Shown here: positions 1,697-46,176 of the stretch, in pieces
How positions within the stretch are numbered: the stretch's first letter is position 1
How the letters are laid out: each line of letters begins with the position of its first letter
Assembly (NCBI RefSeq): GCF_032191835.1
Contig: NC_083227.1
Location: 22,382,001 to 22,446,000 of the forward strand
DNA: 64,000 nucleotides
From: Heteronotia binoei
Lineage: Eukaryota
Direction: 5' to 3'
The notes under the pieces: generated by a model
Seen by the model: only the letters and a program-made list of their open reading frames with translations
Told to the model about the DNA's origin: nothing
The model's database searches: none
Made by a program: the position numbers and the translations under genes

Positions 1697-2661
1697 TCAC
1701 ACAGGTGTCCCGCTCTTTATCCCAGGAGCGCAGGTGGGCATACATGGGATCATCTGGTTGGCACAGTTGCCCTGCTGTGTGACTTCCCTAATCATGTGTT
1801 TCATAAGGTTCGTGTTACGCGTGAAGCTCATGCCGCAGTTGACACATTTGTGTGGTTTCTCTCCCGTGTGGGTTTTCTTGTGGCTCTTCAGGTTGGTGCT
1901 CCGGCTGAATCTTTTCCCACACTCTGAGCACTGATATGGTTTCTCTCCCGTGTGGATTCTTTGGTGGATAATAAGATGGTGGCTCAGGCCAAAGCTCTTC
2001 CCGCAGTCCAGGCACTCGTACGGTTTCTCTCCTGTGTGGGTTCTCTGATGTCTCATAAGGTGCTCGCCCCGGAGGAAACTCTTCCCGCAATCTGAGCATT
2101 TGTACGTTTTCTCTCCTGTGTGGATTCTCTGATGCCTCAGAAGGTGCTCGCCCCGAGAGAAGCTTTTCCCACAGTCTGGGCATTTGTATATCCTCTCTCC
2201 CGTGTGCAATTTCTGGTGGCTCACAAGGTTCCATCTATTAGAGAAGCTTTTGGGGCACTCTGAGCATTTGTATGGTTTGTCGCCCGCATGGGTTCTCTTG
2301 TGGCTGCAGAGCTGCGAGATCAGAGAGAAAGTTTCCCCGCAGTCGGTGCATTTGTAGTGTTTCTCCCCTGTGTGGATTCTCTGATGTCTGTAAAGCTCTG
2401 AGTCCTTTCCAAAAACTTTCCCACATATCAGGCACTTACTCCTTCGGCTTCCGTTACAGGTTCTCCTTTGCAAGCCTGGGTGACAAGTGACGGATTTATC
2501 ACCTGCATGACAAGCGATGGATTTATTCCTTTGCATTTCTGCCTCTCCCCCCTGCCAGGCACGTCCCTCTGGATTCCTGTTATTTTCTTCCAGCATGCAG
2601 TGCTTGATCTCTTCTATCTCCCTTTGCTGTTCTGCATTTACAACTGGCCAGCCTCCACCTG
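1697..2661 (-). CDS. Gene 1, terminal exon: 7 canonical C2H2 fingers + 1 degenerate finger (HMIRE)
   Basis: C-x2-C-x12-H-x3-H repeats with TGEKPY-type linkers. Phase-1 acceptor tcttctttcttgattccag|CAG. Confidence 0.9.
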
Positions 2662-2696
2662 CTGGAATCAAGAAAGAAGACCATTAAAAGAACAGT

Positions 2697-8915: not shown

Positions 8916-9399
8916 CCCCATACTCCACTGGTGGTCCGGGGGGGGGGTGGCTACTGTGGGGCTCTAGAAAATTTGAAACTTTATGTGTATTATTCTTCAA
9001 ATGTATTAATTTCTTTTTTTAATCTTATGACACATGGATAAATTTTCATTGCACTTTATGTACATTATATTGCTAGTTGCATTTTTATTCCAAGACAACA
9101 CTGTAAACTAGGGTAGGTTGAAAAAGTGAGCGTTCCAAGGTCACCCACTGAGCCTAATGGCTGTGGGGGTGATTGGAACCCAGGTCTCCCTGTTCATAGT
9201 CCAACACTAAACCAGCTAGCTCTTCAGGATTATTTTATAATCCTTTCAACAACCCTGTAAGGTAGTGTTCTATGATTAATCCCTCGGGTTTGAGAGCAGG
9301 GCTCACCTACGGCCACTTAACAAGTTCACGGCAGAAGTGAGATTTGAATCAGGGTCCATAGTCCCCAACTCTGGACCGCTCCCAATGAAACCCTCTCAC

Positions 9400-10203
9400 C
9401 TGCCGCTCCTGTCCCTTGGTCACTTCCTGCCTCAGGAGGAAATCCTCCACCAGGGCCACTGCCTGGGAGCAGCTCTTGGATCCCCGCTCCTTCACCCAGC
9501 ACTGGATCTCCTGGGGCAGGATGGCTAAGAACTGCTCCAGGATCACCAAGTCCAGGATCTGCTCCTTGGTGCATAGTTCCGGCTGTAGCCACTGACGACA
9601 AAGATCCCAGAGGTGGCCATAAACTTCCCGCGGCCCCTTGGCTTCCTGGTAGCGGAACTGCCTGAAGTTTCGGCGCCATACCTCTGAGCCGACTGCTTCC
9701 TCCCCCTTGACTTTTTTCAGTTGCCCGGATCCTCTTTCCTCCGTGGTGTCCAGCTCTCCACCAGCCCAAGGCGCCCCTCCGTTCATTCCAAGCAGGGGTC
9801 TGGCTGCCCCTTCTTCTGCCAGCCACTGGGTACTGGTGACAGCTAGTCCCTCAAAAAGGCCAAGGGAGGTCTTCGTATCGCCCCACTGTGTTGTCTCAGC
9901 GAGCTGCGCGTTATATAGACATCCAGACTGAGGGACCTGAACTGTCTTGAGGAATTCCTGCCACTGGGCTTCCCACCTCTGCAACACCGGTCCGTCTACC
10001 AGTTCCCTCTTAAACATCTGAGGGGGGCCCCACCTCAGGCACTGCTCAAAGGGCCCCCCTGCTGGAACAACACGAGGGGCTCCCCCGGCTCTCTCCAATC
10101 CCATTTTCAAAATGGCCGCTTCACCCACATTGGCTTCTGTCTGCAGCCCGGACTCCAGGAACCGGAGACCCAAAGCCGACACCTCTCCCAATTCAGCAGC
10201 CAT
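9400..10203 (-). CDS. Gene 1, first coding exon: N-terminal extension + SCAN domain (268 aa)
   Basis: ORF 9349-10203 contains the SCAN signature FRQFRYQEAKGPREVYGHLWDLCRQWLQPE..TKEQILDLVILEQFLAILPQEIQCWV. Phase-0 donor CAG|GTGAGA at 9400/9399. Confidence 0.9.
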
Positions 10204-18373: not shown

Positions 18374-19113
18374 CTATGACAGGTTCTCTCGCGTGTGGAT
18401 CTTCTTGTGTTTCGTAAGTGCTGGCCTCTCCCGGAAACTCCTCTCGCACACCAAACACTTGTAAGGTTTCTCTCCTGTGTGGATGCGCAGGTGAGCCATG
18501 AGCAGCGCCGTGCGTGTGAAGCTTTTCCCACAGATCGAGCAGGTGTAGGGCTTCTCCCCCGTGTGGACCCGCCGGTGAACGATGAGGTTCGAGTGCTGGC
18601 TGAACCCCTTCCCGCAGTCTGAGCAAGTGTAGGGCTTCTCACCGGTGTGGGACCTCACATGGTCTGTCAGGGCGGAGCTGCGGTGGAAGCTCTTCCCGCA
18701 CTCGAGGCACTTGTAGGGCTTCTCGCCCAGGTGGATCTTTTCATGTTGGTGCAGGCCGGAACTCCAAATGAAGCTCTTGTGGCAGAAGGAACACGAGTAG
18801 GCTTTCTCTCCTGTGTGGATTCTCTGGTGCCCGAGAAGGCAGGAGCCCTGGGTGAAGCTTTTCCCACAATCCAGGCACTTGTATGGCTTCTCCCCTGTAT
18901 GGATTCTCAAGTGCCTGTTGAGGTGCGAGAGCTGGTGGAAACGTTTCCCGCACTCCACGCACTTGTGCGATTTCAGGCCAGGGGGAGTTTTTTCGCAGGC
19001 GCTAATGTCAGAACGCAAACCAAAGGCTCCCCTGCAATCTTCTGACGTTTCCTTTTTCTTAGGGCTATCCAGCTGAGAAAGAGCTGAGTTTTTCCTGGTC
19101 GGCACCTCGCTGT
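18374..19113 (-). CDS. Gene 2, terminal exon: 7 C2H2 fingers
   Basis: Seven canonical fingers with HTGEKPY-type linkers. Phase-1 acceptor ttctcttatcgttcctgcag|AC. Confidence 0.9.
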
Positions 19114-19636
19114 CTGCAGGAACGATAAGAGAATTAGCACTTGAAGGAAGTTTCAGCTGGAACTGACCCAATTTTAATTTTTAGTTAACTTAAGCAGGGA
19201 ATAAAAACCAAGTTTTAAATCTGTGTACCAATGTTCCCTCTAAGCTGCAAAGTCTTGTGAGCAAAAATTCTTGTTTTGTGAGCTACTGGCATTAAAGCTG
19301 TGAGCTACTGCATAAGTTAGTGTGCTCTGGGGGTCACCCTTCCTGAGCGAAGGCAAAAATCTGTGAGCTGGAGGCTAAAAATCTGTGAGCTAGCTCACGC
19401 TCACTCAGCGTAGAGGGAACACTGCTGTGTGCAAACTTCCCTCTCTCCCAGAGGAGGGGGTACATTTTCTTGTTGCAGAGTGAGCTTTTCACTTCTCTCT
19501 CTTTTTGGCTCTCTACTATCATGTGTTTAAAAAACAAACAAACATCCAGGCAAGGTGGAGGGATTGTCTATCCCTCATGCCAATCATAAGGTCACCTCCT
19601 TCCCACATTTCCATCTGGCTGTGCAGGTTGTGAATT

Positions 19637-20064
19637 GCCACAAGGGACAATCAATCAGTGCTCTGAACAGCCAGATGGGAGGCGGCAGGGTGATGGCTTC
19701 ATGACTGTCACAAGGAACAGTTAATCAGCACTCTGAGCAGCTAGATAGGGAGGTGGGAAGGAGGTGGTTTCATGATTGTCACGAGAGACAGTCCATCAGT
19801 GCTCTGCACAGCCAGACAGGAGGAGGGAAGGAGATGGCTTCATAACTGTCATGAGGGACAGCCAGTCAGCACTCAGAACAACCGGATTGGAGGTGGGAAA
19901 GAGATGGCGTCAAGATTTTCACAAGGGAGAAACAGTCTGCATTCTGCACAGCCAGACAGGGAGTTGGGAGGAACGTCTTCCTGACTGTCACAAGAGACTG
20001 TCAATCAGGACTCTGCACAGCCACATGGAGAGGGGGAGAGAGTCAGCTTCATGATTGTCACAAG
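19637..20064. repeat. Diverged ~70-bp tandem repeat, 6 units
   Basis: gtcacaag-type anchors at 19637, 19707, 19778, 19848, 19918, 19987 and 20057. Confidence 0.8.
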
Positions 20065-20321
20065 TAGTGTTCCCTCTAAGCTGAGTGTGAGCTAACTCAC
20101 AGTTTTTTAGCCTCCGGCTCACACATTTGTCTTGGCTCAGGAAAAATGGCCCCAGAGCACACTAATTTATGCAGTAGCTCACAGCTTTAATGCCAGTAGC
20201 TCACAATGCAGATTTTTTTTCTCACAAGACTCCACAGCTTAGAGGAAGCACTCTTGTACAGCTGATTAATTCCTTCATAATATCATAGGTTTCATAGGAT
20301 GCCCTAGAGTTCTAATATTTT

Positions 20322-20725
20322 GATCCTTAGGCAAGTAGACAGCTGGGTGGCGAAACCGCGTACTGACCGTATGGTGACTTGCCTGCCTGGTGCAAAGGTA
20401 GCGGACATTACGCGTGTAGTAGATAGGCTGATAGACAGTGCTGGGGAGGAGCCTGTGGTCGTGGTGCATGTTGGCACCAACGATGTGGGGAAATGCAGTC
20501 GTGAGGTCCTGGAGGAAAAATTTAGGCTGCTAGGTGGGAGACTTAAGGCCAGGACCTCCAAGGTAGCCTTCTCGGAAGTCCTACCTGTTCCACGTGCAGG
20601 GCAGGAAAGACAGGCACAAATTAGAAGTCTCAATGTGTGGATGAGACGATGGTGTAAGGAGGAAGGGTTTAAGTTTGTTAGGCACTGGGATGCTTTCTGG
20701 AACAAGCGGGAGCTGTACAAGAGAG
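20322..20725 (+). mobile_element. CR1 LINE ORF1 fragment (SGNH esterase domain) within a composite insertion
   Basis: Translates to ILRQVDSW..CLPGAKVADIT..VVVHVGTND.., without stops. Starts just after where the GDS motif is expected. Confidence 0.85.
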
Positions 20726-21039
20726 CTGATTTAAAGGAGCTGTACAAGAGAGCTGTACAAGAGAGATGATTTAAGCTGATTAATTCCTTCATAATATCAT
20801 TTTTCTAAGTCTGTTATGATTCTGGCTTACCTGAAGAGGGACAGAAGTAAAAATTGCGTTGTGAAGTATTTAATATAAACTGCAGAGTAAAATGATTATT
20901 ATTTTATTAACTGATATTATTTATTGTCCATCTGAGGCATGCCCTTTGTGGTCCTGCGATACGTGCTGTGCAGGGATGACATATATATCTTTTCAAATAA
21001 AATACAAACAAAGAAGTCAGAAGCGCAGCAAAGCCTTAC

Positions 21040-21151
21040 CCGGTAAAGTGGGATCCGCACTGCTCTCCTGCCTCCCCCTTTTGGAGCTGCCAAGTGGAGC
21101 AGACTTCGTTTTGGAGGAGTACAGGCCCACCTCCGCCAACAGTCCAGAGAC
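21040..21151 (-). CDS. Gene 2, linker exon (VSGLLAEVGLYSSK...ADPTLP; phase 0 to 1)
   Basis: Acceptor ttttcattctgtctcag|GTC and donor CCGG|gtaagg. 112 nt, open, in frame with both flanking exons. Confidence 0.75.
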
Positions 21152-21622
21152 CTGAGACAGAATGAAAATTTGGATCAGGACCCAATCGGGGTGGGCGTCA
21201 CATTGGATGGCAGTGAAACAGAAGGTCTAGGGTTGCCAACCCCAATTCAAGAAATATCTGGGGGTGGGCCAATGTCTCCAGATATTTATTGAATTGGACT
21301 TGGCAACCCTACCTCAAAAAACAGCCCCCCCCCCAGATACCCACAGATCAGTTATCTTATTATATCCTATGGGAATCGGTCTCCATAGGGTATAATGGAA
21401 TGCCCAGCAGACATTTTCCTCCCTCCTCCACTTTCTGATGACCCTGAAGCGGGGGGAAGGCCTCCATACTGGGGGATCCCCTGCCCCCACCTGGGGATTG
21501 GCAACCCTAGGAAGGTCTCCAGTTCAACCCCTGGCATATGGAGGTCTCTCCCATATGACACTGTCCATCAATGACTTCCCACCCCCCTCCTCCAGTCAGC
21601 TCCTGTTTGCTGAACCACTCAC

Positions 21623-21732
21623 ACTGAAGTGTTTTATCTTCCTCTGTCTGAGGCCTGGAGTTTCTCTCTGACCAGGTGGAATGGCTTCCACTGGAGCAGA
21701 CTGGGGAGTGCTCTCTCTCTGTTCCTCTTCCT
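21623..21732 (-). CDS. Possible extra exon of gene 2 (phase 1 to 0; EEEQRESTPQSAPVEAIPP...)
   Basis: Pyrimidine tract + AG and a strong donor AGT|GTGAGT. Open in phase 1, but that phase does not match the SCAN exon donor. Confidence 0.3.
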
Positions 21733-21759
21733 CTTTTTTAAAGGAAAAGTAAAGCATAG

Positions 21760-22530
21760 GAAGGCAACCAAAGTAATTAGGAGGTTGGAGCACCTTCCCA
21801 AGGAGGAGAAGTAGAAGAGTCAGGGACTTTTCAGTTTAGAAAAGAGATGTCTAAAGGGGGGGGGGGGGCATGATAGAGGTTCAAAAATTATGCATGGGAT
21901 GGAGAGAGATGACAAAGAGAAATTTTTCTCCCTCTCTCAAAATATTAGAACTCTAGGGCATCCTATGAAACCTATGGGCAGGAGGTTCGTGACAGACAAA
22001 AGAAAACACTACTTTAAATGGAGACTGATTACAATGTGGCATTTGTTACCGGAGGCAGTGTTCCCTCTGAGTTAGTGTGAGCTAGTTCACAGTTTTTTAG
22101 TCTCCAGCTCGCACATTTTTATCTTAGCTCAGGAAGACTGACTCCAGAGCACACTAATTTATGCAGTAGCTCACAACTTTAATGCCGGTGGCTCACAAAG
22201 TAGAATTTTTGCTCACAAAGACTCTGTGGCTTAGAGGGAATATTGGCTGGAGGATGGAGTGAAGGCCTCAGGAATGAACAGCTTTCTAAGGGAATTAGAT
22301 AAGACTCATGGAGGATAAGCCTATCAATGGCTACTAGCTACAGTGACTGAGGGGAACAGCCACGTTCACAGGCACTAATCTGAATCCCAGAACCAGGAGG
22401 CAACCACAGGGGAAGGCCTCGGCCTCTACGCCCTGTTTTTAGTTCTCCAGAGAAACTGGTTGGCCACACTATGTGAGGCAAGACGCTGCACTGGATGGAC
22501 CACTGGTCTGAGCAGGGCTCTTATGTTCTT
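21760..22530 (+). mobile_element. CR1 ORF2 3' fragment interrupted by a MITE (22056-22246)
   Basis: Encodes degenerate GLFSLEKR.L.G.MIEV.KIMHGMER..; RFVTDKRKHYF. Confidence 0.75.
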
Positions 22531-22574
22531 AAAGCAGTTTTATTTTGGACAGCTTTTCAGTGTTCATCTAGATC

Positions 22575-22709
22575 AGGGGTGGCCAACGGTAGCTCTCCAG
22601 ATGTTTTTTGCCTACAACTCTCATCAGCCCCAGCCAGAACAGCCAATGGCTGGGGCTGATGGGAGTTGTAGGCAAAAAACACCTGGAGAGCTACCGTTGG
22701 CCACCCCTG
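22575..22709. mobile_element. Young palindromic Charlie-type hAT MITE (CAGGGGTGGCCAACGG)
   Basis: Hairpin structure. TSD atctagat/gtctagat fits the Charlie NTCTAGAN target. Near-identical copies at ~62667-62801 and 63838-63954. Confidence 0.85.
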
Positions 22710-23056
22710 GTCTAGATTTAAGCCCAGGAGCATCTTAGAGACCAAGAGTTTTGGGGTATAAGCTTCTGAGACTCAAAGAACATAAGAGAAGCCATGTTGG
22801 ATCAGGCCAGTGGACCCTCAGTCAAGCTTTTATGCAGAAAGAAGCAAGAGGGGGAGAAGGAAGATGACAGCCAGTTGCTCAGGGGCCTGATTCGTCCCCC
22901 GGACCACATGTTTGACACCCCTGATTTAGATGGTGGCCACAATCCTCCCAGCTTCTCCTCAACCAGTTATCCATTTGTGTGTGTGTTTAAGCTCCAGAAG
23001 TTTTTTCTAAATGGGTAGTGGGGTGGGCAGATGAGGCAGGGAAGTCAGATCCTCAC

Positions 23057-23890
23057 CACTTTCTCCATATGTTGTAAGGGCAACAGAGACTCATAGTGCC
23101 CCTCGCCTTCCACAAGAGGCTCAGAGAGATCACAGTCCAGCCTCAGGGGCTCTTCCTGCCGCTGCAAGAAGTCTTCAGCCAAGGCCACCGCCTGAGCACA
23201 AGTCTCAGGGCCGCCTTCCTTGACCCAGTTCTGGATTTCTGGGGGCAGGATAGTCAGGAACTGCTCCAGGATCAGCAGCTCCAGGATCTGCTCCTTGGTC
23301 CTTCTCTCGGGCTTCAGCCACTGATAGCAAAGGAACCACAGGCGACTGCACACCTCCCGTGGACCCTCAGTCTCCAGGTAGCAGAACTGCCGGAAGCGCT
23401 GGCGGCAAACCTCCACACTGACGGTCTCTTCCTCACCTGTCTCATCTTTGGCAAACACCCTGATGTCTGTCTCTGGGCCAGACAGGAGCTCGGCCAGGCG
23501 TTCACCTGTCGGCTGGTGGCTGGAGTTAGTGGCTCCTTCAAAGGGTGGCAGGAAAGGTCCAGCTTTGTCCCATGGGGAGGGCTCTGTGATTTGTGGGTTC
23601 CCCCATCCCACATGAAAGGATTGCAGCTCCTTCGAGAAATCCCGCCACCGGGTTTCCCAAGATTGTGTCAACCTCTCGTCAGCTTCCTCTTTGATTTGTG
23701 GAGGTGTCAGTTTATCTGGAAATTCCTCCATATTCCCACTCTGGATGCTGCAAGGAGTTTCTTTCACTCCTTCAGCTTCTTCTTCTGGTTTGGGACTTAC
23801 CAAGCCTTGTTCTTCTGTTTGCCCTCTAGGCTGGAGTCTGGCTTGGAACAGCAAAAATGAATTTCCCACAGTCTCTTGCTTGGCAGCCAT
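23057..23890 (-). CDS. Gene 2, first coding exon: N-terminal extension + SCAN domain (278 aa)
   Basis: SCAN motif [54 protein letters not shown]. Phase-0 donor GTG|GTGAGG. Confidence 0.9.
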
Positions 23891-30539: not shown

Positions 30540-31050
30540 ATTAAGAACATAGCCATGCTAGATCAGACCAGTGGTCCACCCAGTCTAGCATCCTGCCTCA
30601 GAGTAAGAGACCAGTTCCTCTGGAGGGCCAACAAGAGGGCACAGAGGCCAAGACCTACCCCTGATGTTGCCTCCTGGCTCTGGGATTCAGAGGATTTGTG
30701 CCTCTGAACATGGAGGTACCCTTCAGCCACCATGGCTAGTAGCCCTTGACAGACTTATCCTCCATGAGTCTACCTAACCCCCTTTAAAAGCTGTTTATTC
30801 CTGTGGCCGTCATGACATTCTCTAGCAGCAAATGCCACGTTTTAATCATTCTCTCTGTTAAGTAGTATTGTCTTGTTCATCTTGAACCTGCTACCCGTTG
30901 GTTTCATTGGATGCCCTTGAGTTCTAGTGTTTTGGGAGAGGAAGAAAATTTTCTCCTTATCAGCTCTTTCCACCCCATGGATCTTTGCACTGATATGATA
31001 TATTTGCAAATACTTAAAACTCGGTGTTGAAATGACTTCTTTCACAACAG
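30540..31050 (-). mobile_element. CR1 3' fragment
   Basis: KIHGVERADKEKIFFLSQNTRTQGHPMK motif plus a CR1-type tail. Confidence 0.7.
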
Positions 31051-32555: not shown

Positions 32556-33305
32556 ATGGCCACAGAGCTTACACACAAGCATAATGATTCCCCTAGGATT
32601 AAACTGGAAGAGCCTGATCCAACCGCCCTTGAACCAGGGGGAGGGTTGGAGTCTGATGGAAAACCCCTACATCCTGTTCAGGCCGGGAGTATCCAGGAAT
32701 TTCTCCACACCACAACACCCTCGCAGGTGAAGCAGGAACCGGATGAGGAATTACCACAGCTTTGGGAAGCCCAGTGGCAGGAGTTCCTGAAGGTGGTAGA
32801 GACTCCCCGTTCAAGGTGGGTCCACCATGCGAAGCGGCCAGAGTTGACATTGTGGGAAGATACGAAGATGATTCCAGCCCTCTGTGAAGGACAGGCCAAT
32901 GCTAATCGACTCCTTCAAAGAGAGGGCAAAGCAAAACCACTGGAAGGCCTCCTCATAATAGATGGAGGTGAGGAAGATGATAGAAAAGTGAAGGAAGAAA
33001 CCCTTGAGGAGAATCACACCAATGTGGTCCCGCAGGGCCACCAGTTCTGGCACTTCTGCTATCAGGAGGCTGAGGGTCCTCGAGAGATGTATGCCCAGCT
33101 CCGGGAATTATGTTACCAGTGGTTGGCGCCGGAGAGGCACACCAAGGAGCAGATCCTGGAGCTGGTGATCCTGGAGAAGTTCCTGGCCATCTTGCCAGCA
33201 GAGATCCAGAGCTGGGTCCGAGAAGGAGGACTGGAAAGCTCTGCCCAGGCTGTAGCGCTGGCGGAAGGCTTCCTGCTGAGGCAGCTGGACAGACCAGTAA
33301 AGCAG
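32556..33305 (+). CDS. Gene 3, first coding exon: N-terminal extension + SCAN domain (250 aa)
   Basis: SCAN motif [48 protein letters not shown]. Phase-0 donor CAG|GTGAGA. Candidate acceptors upstream at 32342 and 32550. Confidence 0.9.
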
Positions 33306-34039
33306 GTGAGAGCTTGAAAGAATACCCAAGGGCCCAGAAAAGAGCAAGAGTACAGGAGCACCTCGGAGACTAACAAAATTTGTGGCAGGGGGGAGGAGCT
33401 TTCGTGCGTCACTGCTCACTGCCTCCAATGCAGCTGGAATATGAGTCCTTCTGTCATATATTGGAAAGTGGAGTGATTTCAGATGCTGAATGACAATAGC
33501 AGGCAAATGATATTAGCAGGTGCGATTGGATTAGATGTGATCAGGAATTTTTTGAGCAGGAACACCGTTCTGGCTGGCTTGGTGCTGGGGGTGTGTGGCC
33601 TAATATGCAAATGAGTTCCTGTTTGTAGAAAAAGCCCTTAGCGAAACAATGGTGACACCAGGGGCTAGGGCCTAATATTCAAATTAGTTCCTGCTGGACT
33701 TTTTCTACTCCATGGAGGTCCCTGCCCTCTCCTGCCGCCATTCCCAAACCTCCAGGAGTTTCCCAACCTGGATCTGGCAACCCTGCTCCCCCCGCATTGC
33801 CCGCTGGTGGAGGGCAGGAAGGACCTGGCAGCCCCTGTTCTCCTTGTTTATATTTTGTTCTGTATTGAGAGCATTAAGCGAACACCTGTTGTTCTAGAGC
33901 AGGGGTGTCAAACATGTGGCCCAGGGGCCAAATCAGGCCCCCGGAGGGCTCCTATCAGACTCCTGAGCAACTGGCTCTTGTGTGCTTCTTTTGCCCTCTC
34001 TCTTGCTTTCTTCTGCATCTCAACATCTCAAGGCTTGCT

Positions 34040-37580: not shown

Positions 37581-38932
37581 TCTCTAGGGCCATCCTAATC
37601 AGAGTTATCACTCTTCCAAGCTCCTTGAAGTCAGTGGGCTTAGAAGGAAACAGCTTTGGTTAGGGGTGCCTGGCGATATTCCCTCTAAGCTGCAGAGTCT
37701 TGTGAGCAAAAATTCCACTTTGTGAGCTCCTGGCATTAAAGTTGTGAGCTCCTGACATTAAAGTTGTGAGCTACTGCATAAATTATTGTGCTCTGGGGCC
37801 ATTTTTTCCTGAGCTAGGACAAAAATGTGTGAGCTGGAAGCTAAAAATCTGTGAGCTAGCTCACGCTAACTCAGCTTAGAGGGAACACTGGTGCCTGGTA
37901 AGTTTCCTGCCCAGGGCTTTTTTTGTAGCAGGAACTCCTTTGCATATTAGACCACACACCCCTGAGGTAGCCAGTCCTCCAAGAGTTTAAAGTAGGCCTT
38001 GTACTCCGTATAAACTCTTGGAGGACTGGCTACATCAGTGGGGTTTAGCTTAATATGCAAAGGCGTTCCTGCTACAAAAAAAACCCTGCCCATCTTTAAC
38101 TAAGGAGAGGCAGTCATCTAATTTTTTTGTCCTCAGTGTCCCTCATCTGGAAAATGGGTGTATTGATTGGGTTGCCTGTGACCAGTTCTCCATATAGCAT
38201 TTTTAGTTGTTCCTGGAATCACTGTGCATAGAAACTGAGAGATGAATTTGTAGGGGCAGATGTTGCGGTGTCATGATAGGTAATTGCAGGTCTTGAATTC
38301 AACAGGAGCACAGCTCCTGAACCCTTCCAAAAGTTCCCAAGGTGCAGTTGCATGACAATTCCTGGATTAGGAGAGCAGCCGACCAGCCAGCCAGCAGGGG
38401 CTTTGTCACCACCACCCCCCACAGCCCTCATTAACCTCTGGAGAAGCCCCCACCTCCCTTTCTCCAATTCTTATGTGATTTTGGATGGCGGGTGGCTTCC
38501 TGGCCTTTTGACTGGGCGGTCGGTGGCCATGGAAAGCCCCTAGCAAGTGAGGCCTGCTTGGGCTGGCTGGATCTCTAGCCAGCCCAAGCAGGCCTTGCTC
38601 GCTCACGGCTCTCCTTTCCTGCATCGGGTTGCTTTTGGCTGGGGGGGGCATATGCTAATGAGTTATGCTAATGATCGCCGCCTGTTTTTCTACAAAATGA
38701 CTCCTGGGTAACTGTGATTGGCTCCATCTTTTGAGGGGGGAGCCATTTTGTAGCTGGCCCCGCATTTGGGAGAAGCCTTCAAAGAGCAGCTCCGCCACCG
38801 AGGAGGACCCTCTTTGCAACTGGCTCCAGCTGGTGAACTATGGTGTTTTAAAAAAAAGCTCTCTCTAATCTCATGTCTTGTATGTACTGTTGTAGAGAAC
38901 GATCTCAAGCAGGAATTGTGTCTTTGTTCCAG

Positions 38933-39723
38933 GAGGTGGACCACTGAGAGAAGGTGGGAAGCTTTTGCAGGGGGAAGATTCCAAAGCTGCGCGTCGACAT
39001 GGAACGCTTCCAGAAAGAGGACAGAACGGAAATCAGTCAGAAATTGAGAGGTTACGGGAAAATAACTTGGAAGAGATGGTGGATATTTGGGAGACAGGCT
39101 GGAACGAAACCAGCCGTCGGCGAAAAATCCATCAGGAGACTACTCCAGAAATACGTGCTGAGAGTTGTGAGAACTTAGGCCCCGTCTCAGTCTTGACAAA
39201 GCGCAAGAGGATTGAAACGGGCGAGAAGCTCCATATCTGCTCAGAGTGTGGGAAAAGCTTCAGCCGAAGGTCGGACCTCATCAGGCACCAAAGGATCCAT
39301 ACGGGGGAAAAGCCTCACAAATGCTTCGACTGTGGGAAAAGCTTCTGCCAGAGGTCGCAGCTCCTTGGGCATCAGCGGACGCACACGGGAGAAAAGCCGT
39401 ATGTGTGCCTGGCCTGCGGGAAAAGCTTCGCCCACCACTCGACCTTCATCGCCCACAAGAGGACCCACACGGGGGAGAAGCCGTACAAGTGCTTGGCGTG
39501 CGAGAAGAGCTTCGGCAACCGCTCGGTCTTGATCAAGCACGAAAGGATCCACACCGGCGAGAAGCCGTACCAGTGCTCCGAGTGCGGGAAGCGCTTTAGC
39601 AACCGGACTGGTGTGTTGAAACATGAGAAGACCCACCAGAAGGAGAAGGCCCGTGGAGGCCCAGGCCGTGGGAAAGACATCCGCTTCTTCAGTCACGAAC
39701 ACAAAAGTGTTGGCAGAGACTGA
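38933..39723 (+). CDS. Gene 3, terminal exon: 5 C2H2 fingers
   Basis: Five canonical fingers. Phase-1 acceptor tgtgtctttgttccag|GA, in frame with ORF 38965-39723. Confidence 0.9.
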
Positions 39724-45669: not shown

Positions 45670-46176
45670 CAGAGGTGGCCAAACAGCGGCTCGGGAGCCA
45701 GCGTGGCTCTGGAAGCCCCACCGCCCCATCAGCCAGCTTGGAGAAGGCATTTCTCTCTTTAAATCACTTATCCAAGCAACCAGTGGCCAAATGACATGCA
45801 TTTAAAGTTAAAGTTGCTTTTATCAAAGTTTTCAGGTTTTCACGGCTGGTAACATCATTAGGGTTTGTAAAATCTTTCGGGCTCAAGTGCCGTGTTCTAC
45901 TGGAGAAAGTTTTTCTTCCAGACGTTTCGTTCTCGGCTGCGGAGAACATCCTTAGTGGCGGAGGATGTTCTCCGCAGCCGAGAACGAAACGTCTGGAAGA
46001 AAAACTTTCTCCAGTAGAACACGGCACTTGAGCCCGAAAGATTCTACAAACCCTAATAAAGTTGCTTTCTTTTCATCTCTTCTTACCCAATTTATTTGCC
46101 TTTCTGTTTTGCGGCTCTCAAGCGTCTGACATTTATTGTATGTGGCTCTTATGTTAAGCAAGTCTGGCCACCCCTG
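45670..46176. mobile_element. hAT MITE (CAG(A/G)GGTGGCCAAAC family) hosting a Penelope insertion
   Basis: TSD caatagag/caataaag. Related copies at ~16030-16328 and 30020-30335. Confidence 0.75.
45821..46057. mobile_element. Penelope-like element: tail-to-tail inverted pLTR fragment
   Basis: 96-bp inverted arms (45857-45952 and 45962-46057, one mismatch) and a 12-bp TSD TAAAGTTGCTTT. 3' end ccagccgtgaaaacc on the minus strand, with hammerhead-like core motifs. Confidence 0.75.

What the first reader, a model, noticed from the sequence alone, without database searches (positions are those of the whole stretch)
20260..20800. Composite templated-insertion scar: 27-bp target duplication, 40-bp inverted copy of neighbouring DNA, CR1 ORF1 fragment and re-priming repeats
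Seen: AGCTGATTAATTCCTTCATAATATCAT occurs at 20260-20286 and 20774-20800. Inside, 20284-20323 is a 40/40 reverse complement of 21937-21976, 1.6 kb away, joined through a CAT microhomology. The homologous CR1 copy near 30900 differs at many positions, which supports the local copy as template. Next comes ~400 bp of stop-free, CpG-retaining CR1 ORF1 with no LINE 3' tail. Then GAGCTGTACAAGAGAG appears three times (20710, 20737, 20750), with an aborted AGCTGATT join at 20724-20731. Established: microhomology junctions, locally templated inverted snippets and iterative re-priming are signatures of polymerase-theta end joining and template-switching repair. Inference: a germline break was patched with local DNA and retroelement cDNA/RNA, rather than by normal target-primed retrotransposition.
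Basis: partly seen in the sequence, partly recalled or inferred. Interest (0 to 1): 0.75.

Follow-up and report, generated by a model that had tools for sequence, protein, structure and literature searches.

The report
CR1 cDNA patch at a break
In an intron of a gecko zinc-finger gene, a broken piece of DNA next to a small transposon was mended once with a patchwork of a CR1 retrotransposon ORF1 copy and short copies of nearby sequence, a tidy example of a known kind of repair scar and not a new mechanism.

Summary
These are the exact 27-mer pair, the 40/40 inverted copy of 21937-21976, a stop-free CpG-rich esterase-type CR1 ORF1 fragment, and three copies of a 16-mer at its 3' end.

I add three things.
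1. The 40-mer carries residue states that are rare among CR1 relatives, and its source is an old, decayed CR1 relic. So the copy is local and does not come from the young CR1 that gave ORF1.
2. The locus lies in an intron of a minus-strand SCAN zinc-finger gene. The "inverted" 40-mer therefore has the sense of the host pre-mRNA. The insert reads as [host-intron-sense piece][CR1 sense piece], like a LINE template-jump chimera.
3. The left edge is a rearrangement breakpoint. The adjoining hAT-type MITE is the only one of eight in the window without its 8-bp duplication. A 70-bp satellite stops there. An exact inverted 13-mer of the CR1 stutter motif bridges the edge.

My best reading is an endonuclease-independent-like, reverse-transcriptase-started repair of a break with serial microhomology template switches. 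The 27-mer may be a templated flank copy and not a classical target duplication. Polymerase theta itself cannot be shown.

Unchecked notes from this scan list many other local templated insertions in this genome.

The parts
19562..20064 (+). 70-bp satellite array (about 6 units, with an inverted unit at its left end). It stops mid-unit at the MITE and does not resume anywhere in the window.
20065..20253 (+). hAT-type MITE copy (termini CAGTGTTCCC...GGGAACATTG). It is the only one of 8 full copies without its 8-bp target duplication on the right (3/8 match against 6-8/8 in the others). Its right terminus is the left breakpoint of the event.
20251..20263 (-). Exact inverted copy of the CR1 ORF1 13-mer AGCTGTACAAGAG. 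It bridges the MITE end (CT), a 7-nt filler or flank (CTTGTAC) and the first 4 nt of the 27-mer. It is either a templated inverted CR1 snippet or pre-existing homology.
   Evidence: (I9, I10, I15)
20260..20286 (+). Left copy of the 27-mer: a fill-in target duplication or a templated copy of the right flank.
20284..20323 (+). 40-nt copy of the CR1 relic, inverted relative to its source and in the sense of the minus-strand host pre-mRNA. CAT is shared with the 27-mer and the last A with the ORF1 piece, so 36-37 nt are unambiguous.
20323..20723 (+). Young CR1 ORF1 esterase fragment, sense strand. It corresponds to residues 143-279 of a 302-aa ORF1 and starts just after the GDS motif. It lacks the ORF1 C-terminus, ORF2 and the 3' UTR.
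20710..20773 (+). Stutter zone: unit A 20710-20736 (native ELYKR motif followed by AGCTGATT, the start of the 27-mer), unit B 20737-20749 (13 nt), unit C 20750-20773 (most native-like). GAG triplets sit at each jump.
   Evidence: (D5)
20774..20800 (+). Right copy of the 27-mer, contiguous with a right flank that is unique in the window.
21937..21976 (+). Source of the 40-mer inside the CR1 relic. It encodes QNIRTLGHPMKPM.
21740..22520 (+). Old, decayed CR1 ORF2 C-terminal relic with a stop, a frameshift and CpG o/e 0.16-0.21. It is split by a MITE at 22057-22240 that keeps its duplication.
18377..23890 (-). Inferred host transcription unit: SCAN exon at 23048-23890 and C2H2 zinc-finger exon at 18377-19171, both on the minus strand. 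The event and the relic lie in the intron between them.

Best explanation
A single recent event mended a DNA break at the right terminus of a hAT-type MITE, inside an intron of a minus-strand SCAN zinc-finger gene. The break cost the MITE's right-hand duplication and the rest of a satellite array. I infer the following steps. The 3' end of the right-hand DNA end (...AATCAGCT-3' on the bottom strand) annealed inside the ORF1 region of a young CR1 RNA, at a site that matches it in 8 of 10 positions. It was then extended by a reverse transcriptase. Early synthesis slipped three times between GAG triplets and produced the repeated ELYKR motif. After about 400 nt the growing strand jumped to a second template with the sequence of the bottom strand at the CR1 relic 1.1-1.6 kb away. 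That template was either the host gene's nascent intron RNA or the strand's own resected DNA (snap-back). It copied 37-40 nt there. The strand was then joined to the left end through short microhomologies (CAT, AGCT, CT). In my preferred version this took two more short templated copies, the 27-mer of the right flank and an inverted 11-13 nt of the CR1 cDNA, so the '27-bp target duplication' is a templated flank copy. The polymerase could be the CR1 reverse transcriptase, polymerase theta, or both. The product is a dead, non-mobile scar.
For: Shown. (1) All junctions carry 1-4 nt overlaps. (2) The ORF1 piece is young and CR1-type: 89% identity to an intact 302-aa ORF1, CpG o/e 0.57, and no 3' part of the element. 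In lepidosaurs only canonical CR1 carries an esterase ORF1 (PMC13343379). (3) The 40-mer equals an old relic. That relic has a stop and a frameshift, CpG o/e 0.16-0.21, a MITE nested in it, and at best 52-63% identity to any of 1.84 billion representative proteins. It carries I and L where 116 relatives mostly have T and R, and no relative has I, L and P together. (4) The sibling copy in the window differs at about 7/40 positions. (5) SCAN and C2H2 exons flank the locus on the minus strand, so the 40-mer is in pre-mRNA sense and the insert has the 5'-other-RNA / 3'-LINE layout of template-jump chimeras (PMC2104539 and bioRxiv 10.1101/2025.02.02.635956, abstracts only). (6) The left edge is a breakpoint: the MITE duplication matches 3/8 against 6-8/8 in 7 other copies, and the satellite never resumes. 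(7) The 13-mer occurs only four times in the window, three in the stutter and one inverted exactly at the edge, against 0 expected. (8) Unit A's first 22 nt equal the junction expected if the right-hand 3' end primed at the matching CR1 site. (9) Human non-classical L1 insertions share 3' truncation, no tail, target deletion, 4-312 nt of extra nucleotides and microhomology (PMC1920257). Non-LTR reverse transcriptases perform microhomology joining and snap-back in vitro.
Against: No reads, no empty allele and no genome-wide search were available, so uniqueness and assembly correctness are assumed. The native nucleotide sequence of the donor CR1 ORF1 is unknown, so the order of the stutter steps is a reconstruction. 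The perfect 27-mer pair is what a plain staggered cut with fill-in would give, and that is simpler than two extra template switches. The MITE's lost duplication could come from an older, unrelated deletion. The 7-nt CTTGTAC also pairs, with one bulge, with the MITE's left flank, so its origin is ambiguous. Transcription of the host intron in the germline was not shown. CR1-type enzymes are thought to need their own 3' UTR, which is absent here.
Confidence: 0.5

Rival explanations
1. Endonuclease-dependent but aberrant CR1 target-primed reverse transcription. The CR1 endonuclease made two nicks 27 bp apart. The bottom-strand 3' end primed internally on CR1 RNA by microhomology and stuttered. 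The cDNA jumped to host intron RNA, and the top-strand overhang was joined through CAT and filled in, giving a true 27-bp target duplication. The MITE's missing duplication and the inverted 13-mer are an older deletion and a homology that favoured this site.
For: There is a perfect 27-mer pair with sharp ends. This route needs the fewest steps. The stutter lies at the end where cDNA synthesis would start. Unchecked notes from this scan report flank duplications of 11-29 bp at other local templated insertions in this genome. The 13-mer could tether CR1 RNA to the top-strand flank next to the priming site.
Against: It needs two coincidences. One is a 13/13 inverted match at the exact edge, with 0 expected in 128 kb. 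The other is an unrelated breakpoint 7 nt away at the only MITE lacking its duplication. No CR1 3' recognition sequence is present.
Confidence: 0.27
2. Purely DNA-templated repair with no reverse transcription step (polymerase-theta end joining or replication-based template switching, MMBIR/FoSTeS type). The ORF1 piece was copied from the DNA of a full-length CR1 elsewhere in the genome, and the 40-mer from resected local DNA.
For: There is serial microhomology, both direct and inverted templated pieces, and a target deletion. Unchecked notes from this scan report many local templated insertions without any LINE part in this genome.
Against: A 400-nt ectopic DNA template from another locus is less usual than abundant CR1 RNA or cDNA. 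The stutter at a site matching the right-hand 3' end fits priming on a free RNA. The [host-RNA sense][CR1 sense] layout is what a template jump predicts.
Confidence: 0.13
3. Twin priming or inversion during one ordinary CR1 retrotransposition, with both the 40-mer and the ORF1 piece coming from the same CR1 RNA.
For: Both pieces are CR1-derived and lie in opposite orientations between direct repeats.
Against: The inverted piece comes from the 3' part of the element and the sense piece from the 5' part, the reverse of twin priming. There is no 3' end. The 40-mer matches a decayed relic in every base, including rare residue states. Chance identity with a young master is roughly 0.85^37, under 1% (my estimate).
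Confidence: 0.04
4. Assembly artefact, or one copy of a multi-copy composite repeat.
For: Neither could be tested. The exact insert ORFs are not in the protein collection, which says little either way.
Against: Precise microhomology junctions, exact flank repeats and a sensible template for each piece are not what mis-joins give. Nothing else in the 64-kb window resembles the composite.
Confidence: 0.06

Closest known systems
Endonuclease-independent / non-classical LINE-1 insertions at DNA breaks (Morrish et al. 2002, from memory; Sen et al. 2007, PMC1920257)
   Same: A 3'-truncated LINE fragment without a tail, extra non-LINE nucleotides at a junction, microhomologies, and evidence of lost target DNA.
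   Different: The element is CR1 in a gecko, not L1. A perfect 27-nt flank repeat is present, and those authors excluded any such repeat. The fragment comes from ORF1, whereas most human cases come from the 3' half. The stutter at the 3' junction has no counterpart there.
LINE reverse-transcriptase template-jump chimeras such as U6/L1 and tripartite retrocopies (PMC2104539; bioRxiv 10.1101/2025.02.02.635956)
   Same: A 5' piece in the sense of another cellular RNA is fused to a 3' LINE piece in sense, with short overlaps.
   Different: The second template would be an unspliced local intron, not an abundant small RNA. The LINE part lacks its own 3' end. The RNA nature of the template is not shown.
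Polymerase-theta-mediated end joining with templated insertions (review PMC12426944, not read here)
   Same: Microhomology at every junction, short direct and inverted copies of flanks, and repeated synthesis with re-annealing.
   Different: One template lies 1.1-1.6 kb away and one piece is 400 nt of retroelement, both outside what I recall as the usual short-range pattern. The enzyme cannot be identified from sequence.
Twin priming of L1 (Ostertag and Kazazian 2001, from memory; PMC2837659)
   Same: Opposite orientations of LINE-derived pieces between direct repeats.
   Different: The order of the pieces is reversed, there is no 3' end, and the inverted piece comes from a neighbouring relic and not from the inserting RNA.
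Other local inverted templated insertions with 11-29 bp flank duplications noted in this same gecko genome (scan notes s1-330147, s1-328448; unchecked)
   Same: A short inverted copy of DNA 0.7-1.7 kb away plus a flank duplication of similar length.
   Different: As summarised, those notes do not mention retroelement cDNA. This locus links such a patch physically to CR1 ORF1 sequence.

Membership tests
[quoted passage not shown] | Insert ends with the CR1 3' UTR and its terminal repeat | tested here: not met
   The insert ends inside ORF1 (residue ~279 of 302). No ORF2 or 3' UTR is present.
[quoted passage not shown] | One colinear, 5'-truncated copy of the element | tested here: not met
   The insert has four or five pieces with different templates and orientations.
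CR1 ORF1 (esterase type) | SGNH/GDSL esterase domain after a zinc-finger/coiled-coil N-terminus in a ~300-aa protein | tested here: met
   Pfam PF13472 at 1.8e-9. PDB 4c1b at 6.9e-22. 89% identity to residues 143-279 of the 302-aa P0124, which has a CxxC...CxxC motif and a coiled-coil-like N-terminus by eye. The fragment holds only the esterase part.
Endonuclease-independent (non-classical) LINE insertion | 3' truncation and absence of the element's tail | tested here: met
Endonuclease-independent (non-classical) LINE insertion | Absence of target-site duplication | tested here: inconclusive
   A perfect 27-mer pair exists. It may be a templated flank copy, given the breakpoint and the inverted 13-mer to its left.
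Endonuclease-independent (non-classical) LINE insertion | Deletion of target DNA; extra nucleotides; microhomology | tested here: met
   The MITE duplication is missing and the satellite is truncated. There is a 37-40 nt extra piece and 1-4 nt overlaps. That the deletion belongs to the same event is inferred.
Endonuclease-independent (non-classical) LINE insertion | Target does not match the element's endonuclease site | not testable with these tools
   The cleavage preference of the gecko CR1 endonuclease is not known to me.
Polymerase-theta-mediated end joining | Microhomology junctions with insertions templated from the flanks | tested here: met
Polymerase-theta-mediated end joining | Dependence on POLQ | not testable with these tools
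   Sequence alone cannot separate POLQ from a LINE reverse transcriptase, which shows similar activities in vitro.
Twin priming | The inverted 5' piece lies upstream in the same RNA of a sense 3' piece that keeps the element's 3' end | tested here: not met
   The inverted piece is from the ORF2 C-terminus and the sense piece from ORF1. The inverted piece carries relic-specific states.
Template-jump chimeric retrocopy | Both parts lie in the sense of their RNAs on one strand, with the LINE part 3' | tested here: met
   The 40-mer is in the sense of the minus-strand host transcript inferred from the SCAN and C2H2 exons. ORF1 is in sense on the same strand.
Template-jump chimeric retrocopy | The template of the 5' part was RNA | not testable with these tools
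   The piece has no splice junction, and no RNA data were available.

The most novel reading that the evidence does not exclude
In this gecko the CR1 reverse transcriptase acts as a break-repair polymerase that patches breaks with cDNA of whatever RNA is at hand, including the nascent transcript of the broken gene. This locus joins CR1 cDNA directly to a patch in local-transcript sense. It would then be the link showing that the genome's many 'local inverted templated insertions with flank duplications' are reverse-transcriptase products and not DNA-polymerase template switches. The break itself might come from abortive transposase cleavage at the MITE terminus.
Probability: 0.12. Interest if true: 0.7.

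Novelty: new member of a known kind. Interest (0 to 1): 0.4.

Why it matters
Germline scars that keep every junction intact are rare records of how breaks are mended in vivo. This one shows a LINE-derived piece, a local patch and a flank copy joined in series. It does so in a reptile whose main LINEs (CR1) are thought to need their own 3' end. It suggests a test. If local templated patches in this genome tend to lie in the sense of the host transcript and within one transcription unit, reverse transcription of nascent RNA would be a general source of small structural variants, and not only DNA template switching. As a single locus it has no evident effect on the host gene.

Tried and rejected
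There is therefore no read support, no empty allele, no donor DNA and no genome-wide count of the 40-mer.

An exact look-up of the insert's own ORFs, including the 162-aa antisense ORF that spans the right 27-mer to the 40-mer, found nothing. That is uninformative.

A word-based protein search with the relic's ORF2 piece found no candidates. The exhaustive search worked.

The search of earlier findings by sequence returned nothing.

I considered that the esterase piece might come from a Ngaro element, prompted by scan notes. I rejected this because the closest proteins are about 300 aa, with a zinc-finger/coiled-coil region followed by the esterase, like ZfL2-1 ORF1p.

I considered that the right flank continues the satellite. 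Its alignment score is no better than shuffles.

I considered that the MITE's inverted repeat extends into CTTGTAC. Other copies show no such extension.

I considered that the repeated 16-mer was templated from the flank. I rejected this because it encodes the native ELYKR in frame.

I looked for a paralogue of the right flank that would show the native neighbour of the 27-mer. There is none in the window.

Full report
**Observation.**
- The 27-mer at 20260-20286 recurs exactly at 20774-20800. It has no third copy in the window even with three mismatches allowed, against 0 expected.
- Positions 20284-20323 are a perfect reverse complement of 21937-21976. The bases just outside both ends differ, so the copy is exactly 40 nt. 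CAT is shared with the 27-mer and the last A with the next piece.
- The only other similar stretch, in the CR1 copy near 30900, matches 31/35 by BLAST and about 33/40 in my alignment.
- From 20323 the plus strand is open to 20769.
- The 16-mer starts at 20710, 20737 and 20750. Tandem Repeats Finder reports a 13-nt period there.
- AGCTGATT at 20724-20731 repeats the start of the 27-mer.

**What the pieces are: the ORF1 fragment.** The open frame is an SGNH/GDSL esterase: Pfam PF13472 at 1.8e-9 and the solved ZfL2-1 ORF1p esterase 4c1b at 6.9e-22.
- Its closest relative is P0124, an intact 302-aa protein from a public read assembly. It is 89% identical over 137 residues.
- P0124 and its lizard and turtle relatives have what looks by eye like a CxxC...CxxC motif and a coiled coil, then a linker, then the esterase. 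That is the layout of ZfL2-1 ORF1p.
- A 2026 survey states that in lepidosaurs L2 lacks ORF1, while canonical CR1 carries the esterase type (PMC13343379). The CR1 ORF1 label therefore stands. I checked this because scan notes mention Ngaro elements with esterases in this genome.
- The fragment covers residues 143-279. It begins right after the GDS motif and ends in ...FWNKRELYKR.
- P0124 continues ELYKRDGLHLSREG. So the repeated motif is native CR1 coding sequence, and unit C (ELYKRDDL) is the most native-like copy.
- CpG observed/expected is 0.57, against 0.25 for the window. The piece is young.

**What the pieces are: the 40-mer source.** The source lies in a CR1 ORF2 C-terminal relic at about 21740-22520 on the plus strand.
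- The relic is old. It has a stop and a frameshift and CpG observed/expected of 0.16-0.21. A MITE with its own 8-bp duplication is nested in it.
- A word-based protein search found no candidates for it. The exhaustive search of 1.84 billion representatives gave at best 52-63% identity.
- Across 116 relatives the segment reads SHNTRTRGHPMKLxG. The relic reads QNIRTLGHPMKPMG. Its I, L and P are each seen in 4-6 of about 110 relatives, and no relative has all three.
- The sibling relic in the window has T and Q at the first two of these positions.
- The snippet therefore carries states that look private to this relic. A young CR1 RNA would match all 37 unambiguous bases with a chance well under a few per cent (my estimate). 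Local templating is well supported, though without a genome-wide search it is not proven.
- A caution: exact 40-nt runs do occur between diverged copies of other repeat families in this window.

**New context 1: the host gene.** The minus strand carries a SCAN-domain exon at 23048-23890 and a C2H2 zinc-finger exon at 18377-19171. Two other SCAN/zinc-finger pairs in the window have the same spacing and order.
- The event and the relic therefore most likely lie in one intron of a minus-strand gene. This is an inference from exon order.
- The pre-mRNA has the sequence of the bottom strand. At the relic that sequence is exactly the 40-mer as it appears on the top strand of the insert.
- The insert thus reads 5'-[host-intron RNA sense, 40 nt][CR1 RNA sense, 400 nt]-3'. 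That is the layout of LINE template-jump chimeras (abstracts of PMC2104539 and bioRxiv 10.1101/2025.02.02.635956).
- The same geometry arises if the growing bottom strand snapped back on its own resected DNA. Both routes explain why the copy is local and inverted.

**New context 2: the left edge is a breakpoint.** The sequence left of the 27-mer is a 189-bp hAT-type MITE at 20065-20253.
- Seven other full copies in the window keep 6-8 of 8 bases of their target duplication. This copy has 3 of 8.
- A 70-bp satellite at 19562-20064 runs up to the MITE and never resumes. The right flank aligns to the satellite no better than shuffled sequence.
- So DNA was lost at the MITE's right terminus, 7 nt from the 27-mer.
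- The 13-mer AGCTGTACAAGAG, the core of the stutter motif, occurs only four times in the window. Three are in the stutter. The fourth is inverted at 20251-20263, spanning the last two MITE bases, the 7-nt CTTGTAC and the first four bases of the 27-mer (0 expected).
- Because ELYKR is native to CR1, any copying went from CR1 to the edge and not the reverse.
- CTTGTAC also pairs, with one bulge, with the MITE's left flank in a hairpin, so its origin is not certain.

**Mechanism.** The following is inferred.
1. A break arose at or near the MITE terminus.
2. The right-hand bottom-strand 3' end (...AATCAGCT) matches the CR1 RNA site AGAUGAUUUA in 8 of 10 positions. The first 22 nt of unit A are exactly the junction that priming there would give.
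3. Three slips between GAG triplets explain units A to C.
4. About 400 nt of ORF1 were then copied.
5. A jump with 1 nt of overlap led to the intron RNA or to the strand's own DNA, where 37-40 nt were copied.
6. The end ...CCTATG-3' met CAT.

Two endings fit from that point.
- **(a)** The CAT belonged to a 27-nt top-strand overhang of a staggered break, and fill-in made a true target duplication.
- **(b)** The strand made two more short copies, the 27-mer of the right flank (AGCT overlap) and 11-13 nt of its own CR1 cDNA (AGCT is a palindrome). It then joined the MITE end through CT.

Ending (a) is simpler but leaves the inverted 13-mer and the nearby breakpoint as coincidences. Ending (b) explains both. 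It also makes the event match human non-classical L1 insertions: 3' truncated, no tail, target deletion, extra nucleotides in 71% of cases, and microhomology (PMC1920257). I prefer (b), at about 0.50 against 0.27.

**Which polymerase.** Polymerase theta is one candidate. Group II intron-type reverse transcriptases, close kin of LINE enzymes, also do microhomology annealing and snap-back in vitro, and the authors suggest LINE enzymes may share this (bioRxiv 10.1101/2022.03.14.484287). Sequence cannot tell these apart.

**Age.** There are no differences across 27 + 40 + 13 nt of paired copies, and the CpG content is retained. Both point to a recent event. It is younger than the MITE family, whose copies are about 80-88% alike, and younger than the relic.

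**Limits.** As a result I have no reads, no empty allele, no donor DNA and no genome-wide copy counts. The insert's ORFs are not in the protein collection. Unchecked scan notes name the species as Bynoe's gecko. They also list many local templated insertions with 11-29 bp flank duplications in this genome. I use them as context only.

**Verdict.** This is a well-preserved single scar of a known kind: break repair with LINE cDNA and templated patches. It has two instructive twists. The local patch is in the sense of the host transcript, and the apparent target duplication may itself be templated. Interest is moderate, and I class it as a new member of a known kind.

Noticed in passing
window 1700-2671(-), 9352-10203(-), 18377-19171(-), 23048-23890(-), 32556-33314(+), 38965-39720(+): Three SCAN-exon / C2H2-exon pairs, two on the minus strand and one on the plus strand. 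They form a small cluster of SCAN zinc-finger genes upstream of the KRAB zinc-finger gene at 45-58 kb.
   Followed up: partly
window 3608, 12771, 16852, 19237-19423(-), 20065, 22057, 37682-37889(-), 53651, 58789: A hAT-type MITE family of about 190 bp with 8-bp target duplications and termini CAGTGTTCCC...GGGAACATTG. At least ten copies are 80-88% alike. One is nested in the CR1 relic.
   Followed up: partly
window 19562-20064: A 70-bp satellite of about six units, with one inverted unit at its left end (19562-19626). It ends abruptly at the MITE.
   Followed up: partly
window 19276-19315 and 20167-20206: A 40-nt exact inverted match between two MITE copies that are only about 84% alike overall. 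It shows that exact 40-mers between old repeat copies do occur here.
   Followed up: no
window 45871-45952 and 45962-46043: An 82-nt perfect inverted repeat with a 9-nt spacer. It overlaps the 96-bp Penelope-like hairpin already noted by the scan at 45809-46068.
   Followed up: no
window 21228-21311 and 21494-21510: Short inverted repeats sharing TAGGGTTGCCAA... motifs between the event and the relic. They look like another small repeat family also present near 25.8, 28.9 and 29.4 kb.
   Followed up: no
protein P0124 (public read assembly, 1097-nt contig): An intact 302-aa CR1 ORF1 (zinc-finger-like motif, coiled-coil-like stretch, esterase) that is 89% identical to the fragment. This suggests the donor family or a close relative is or recently was active in some squamate.
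   Followed up: partly
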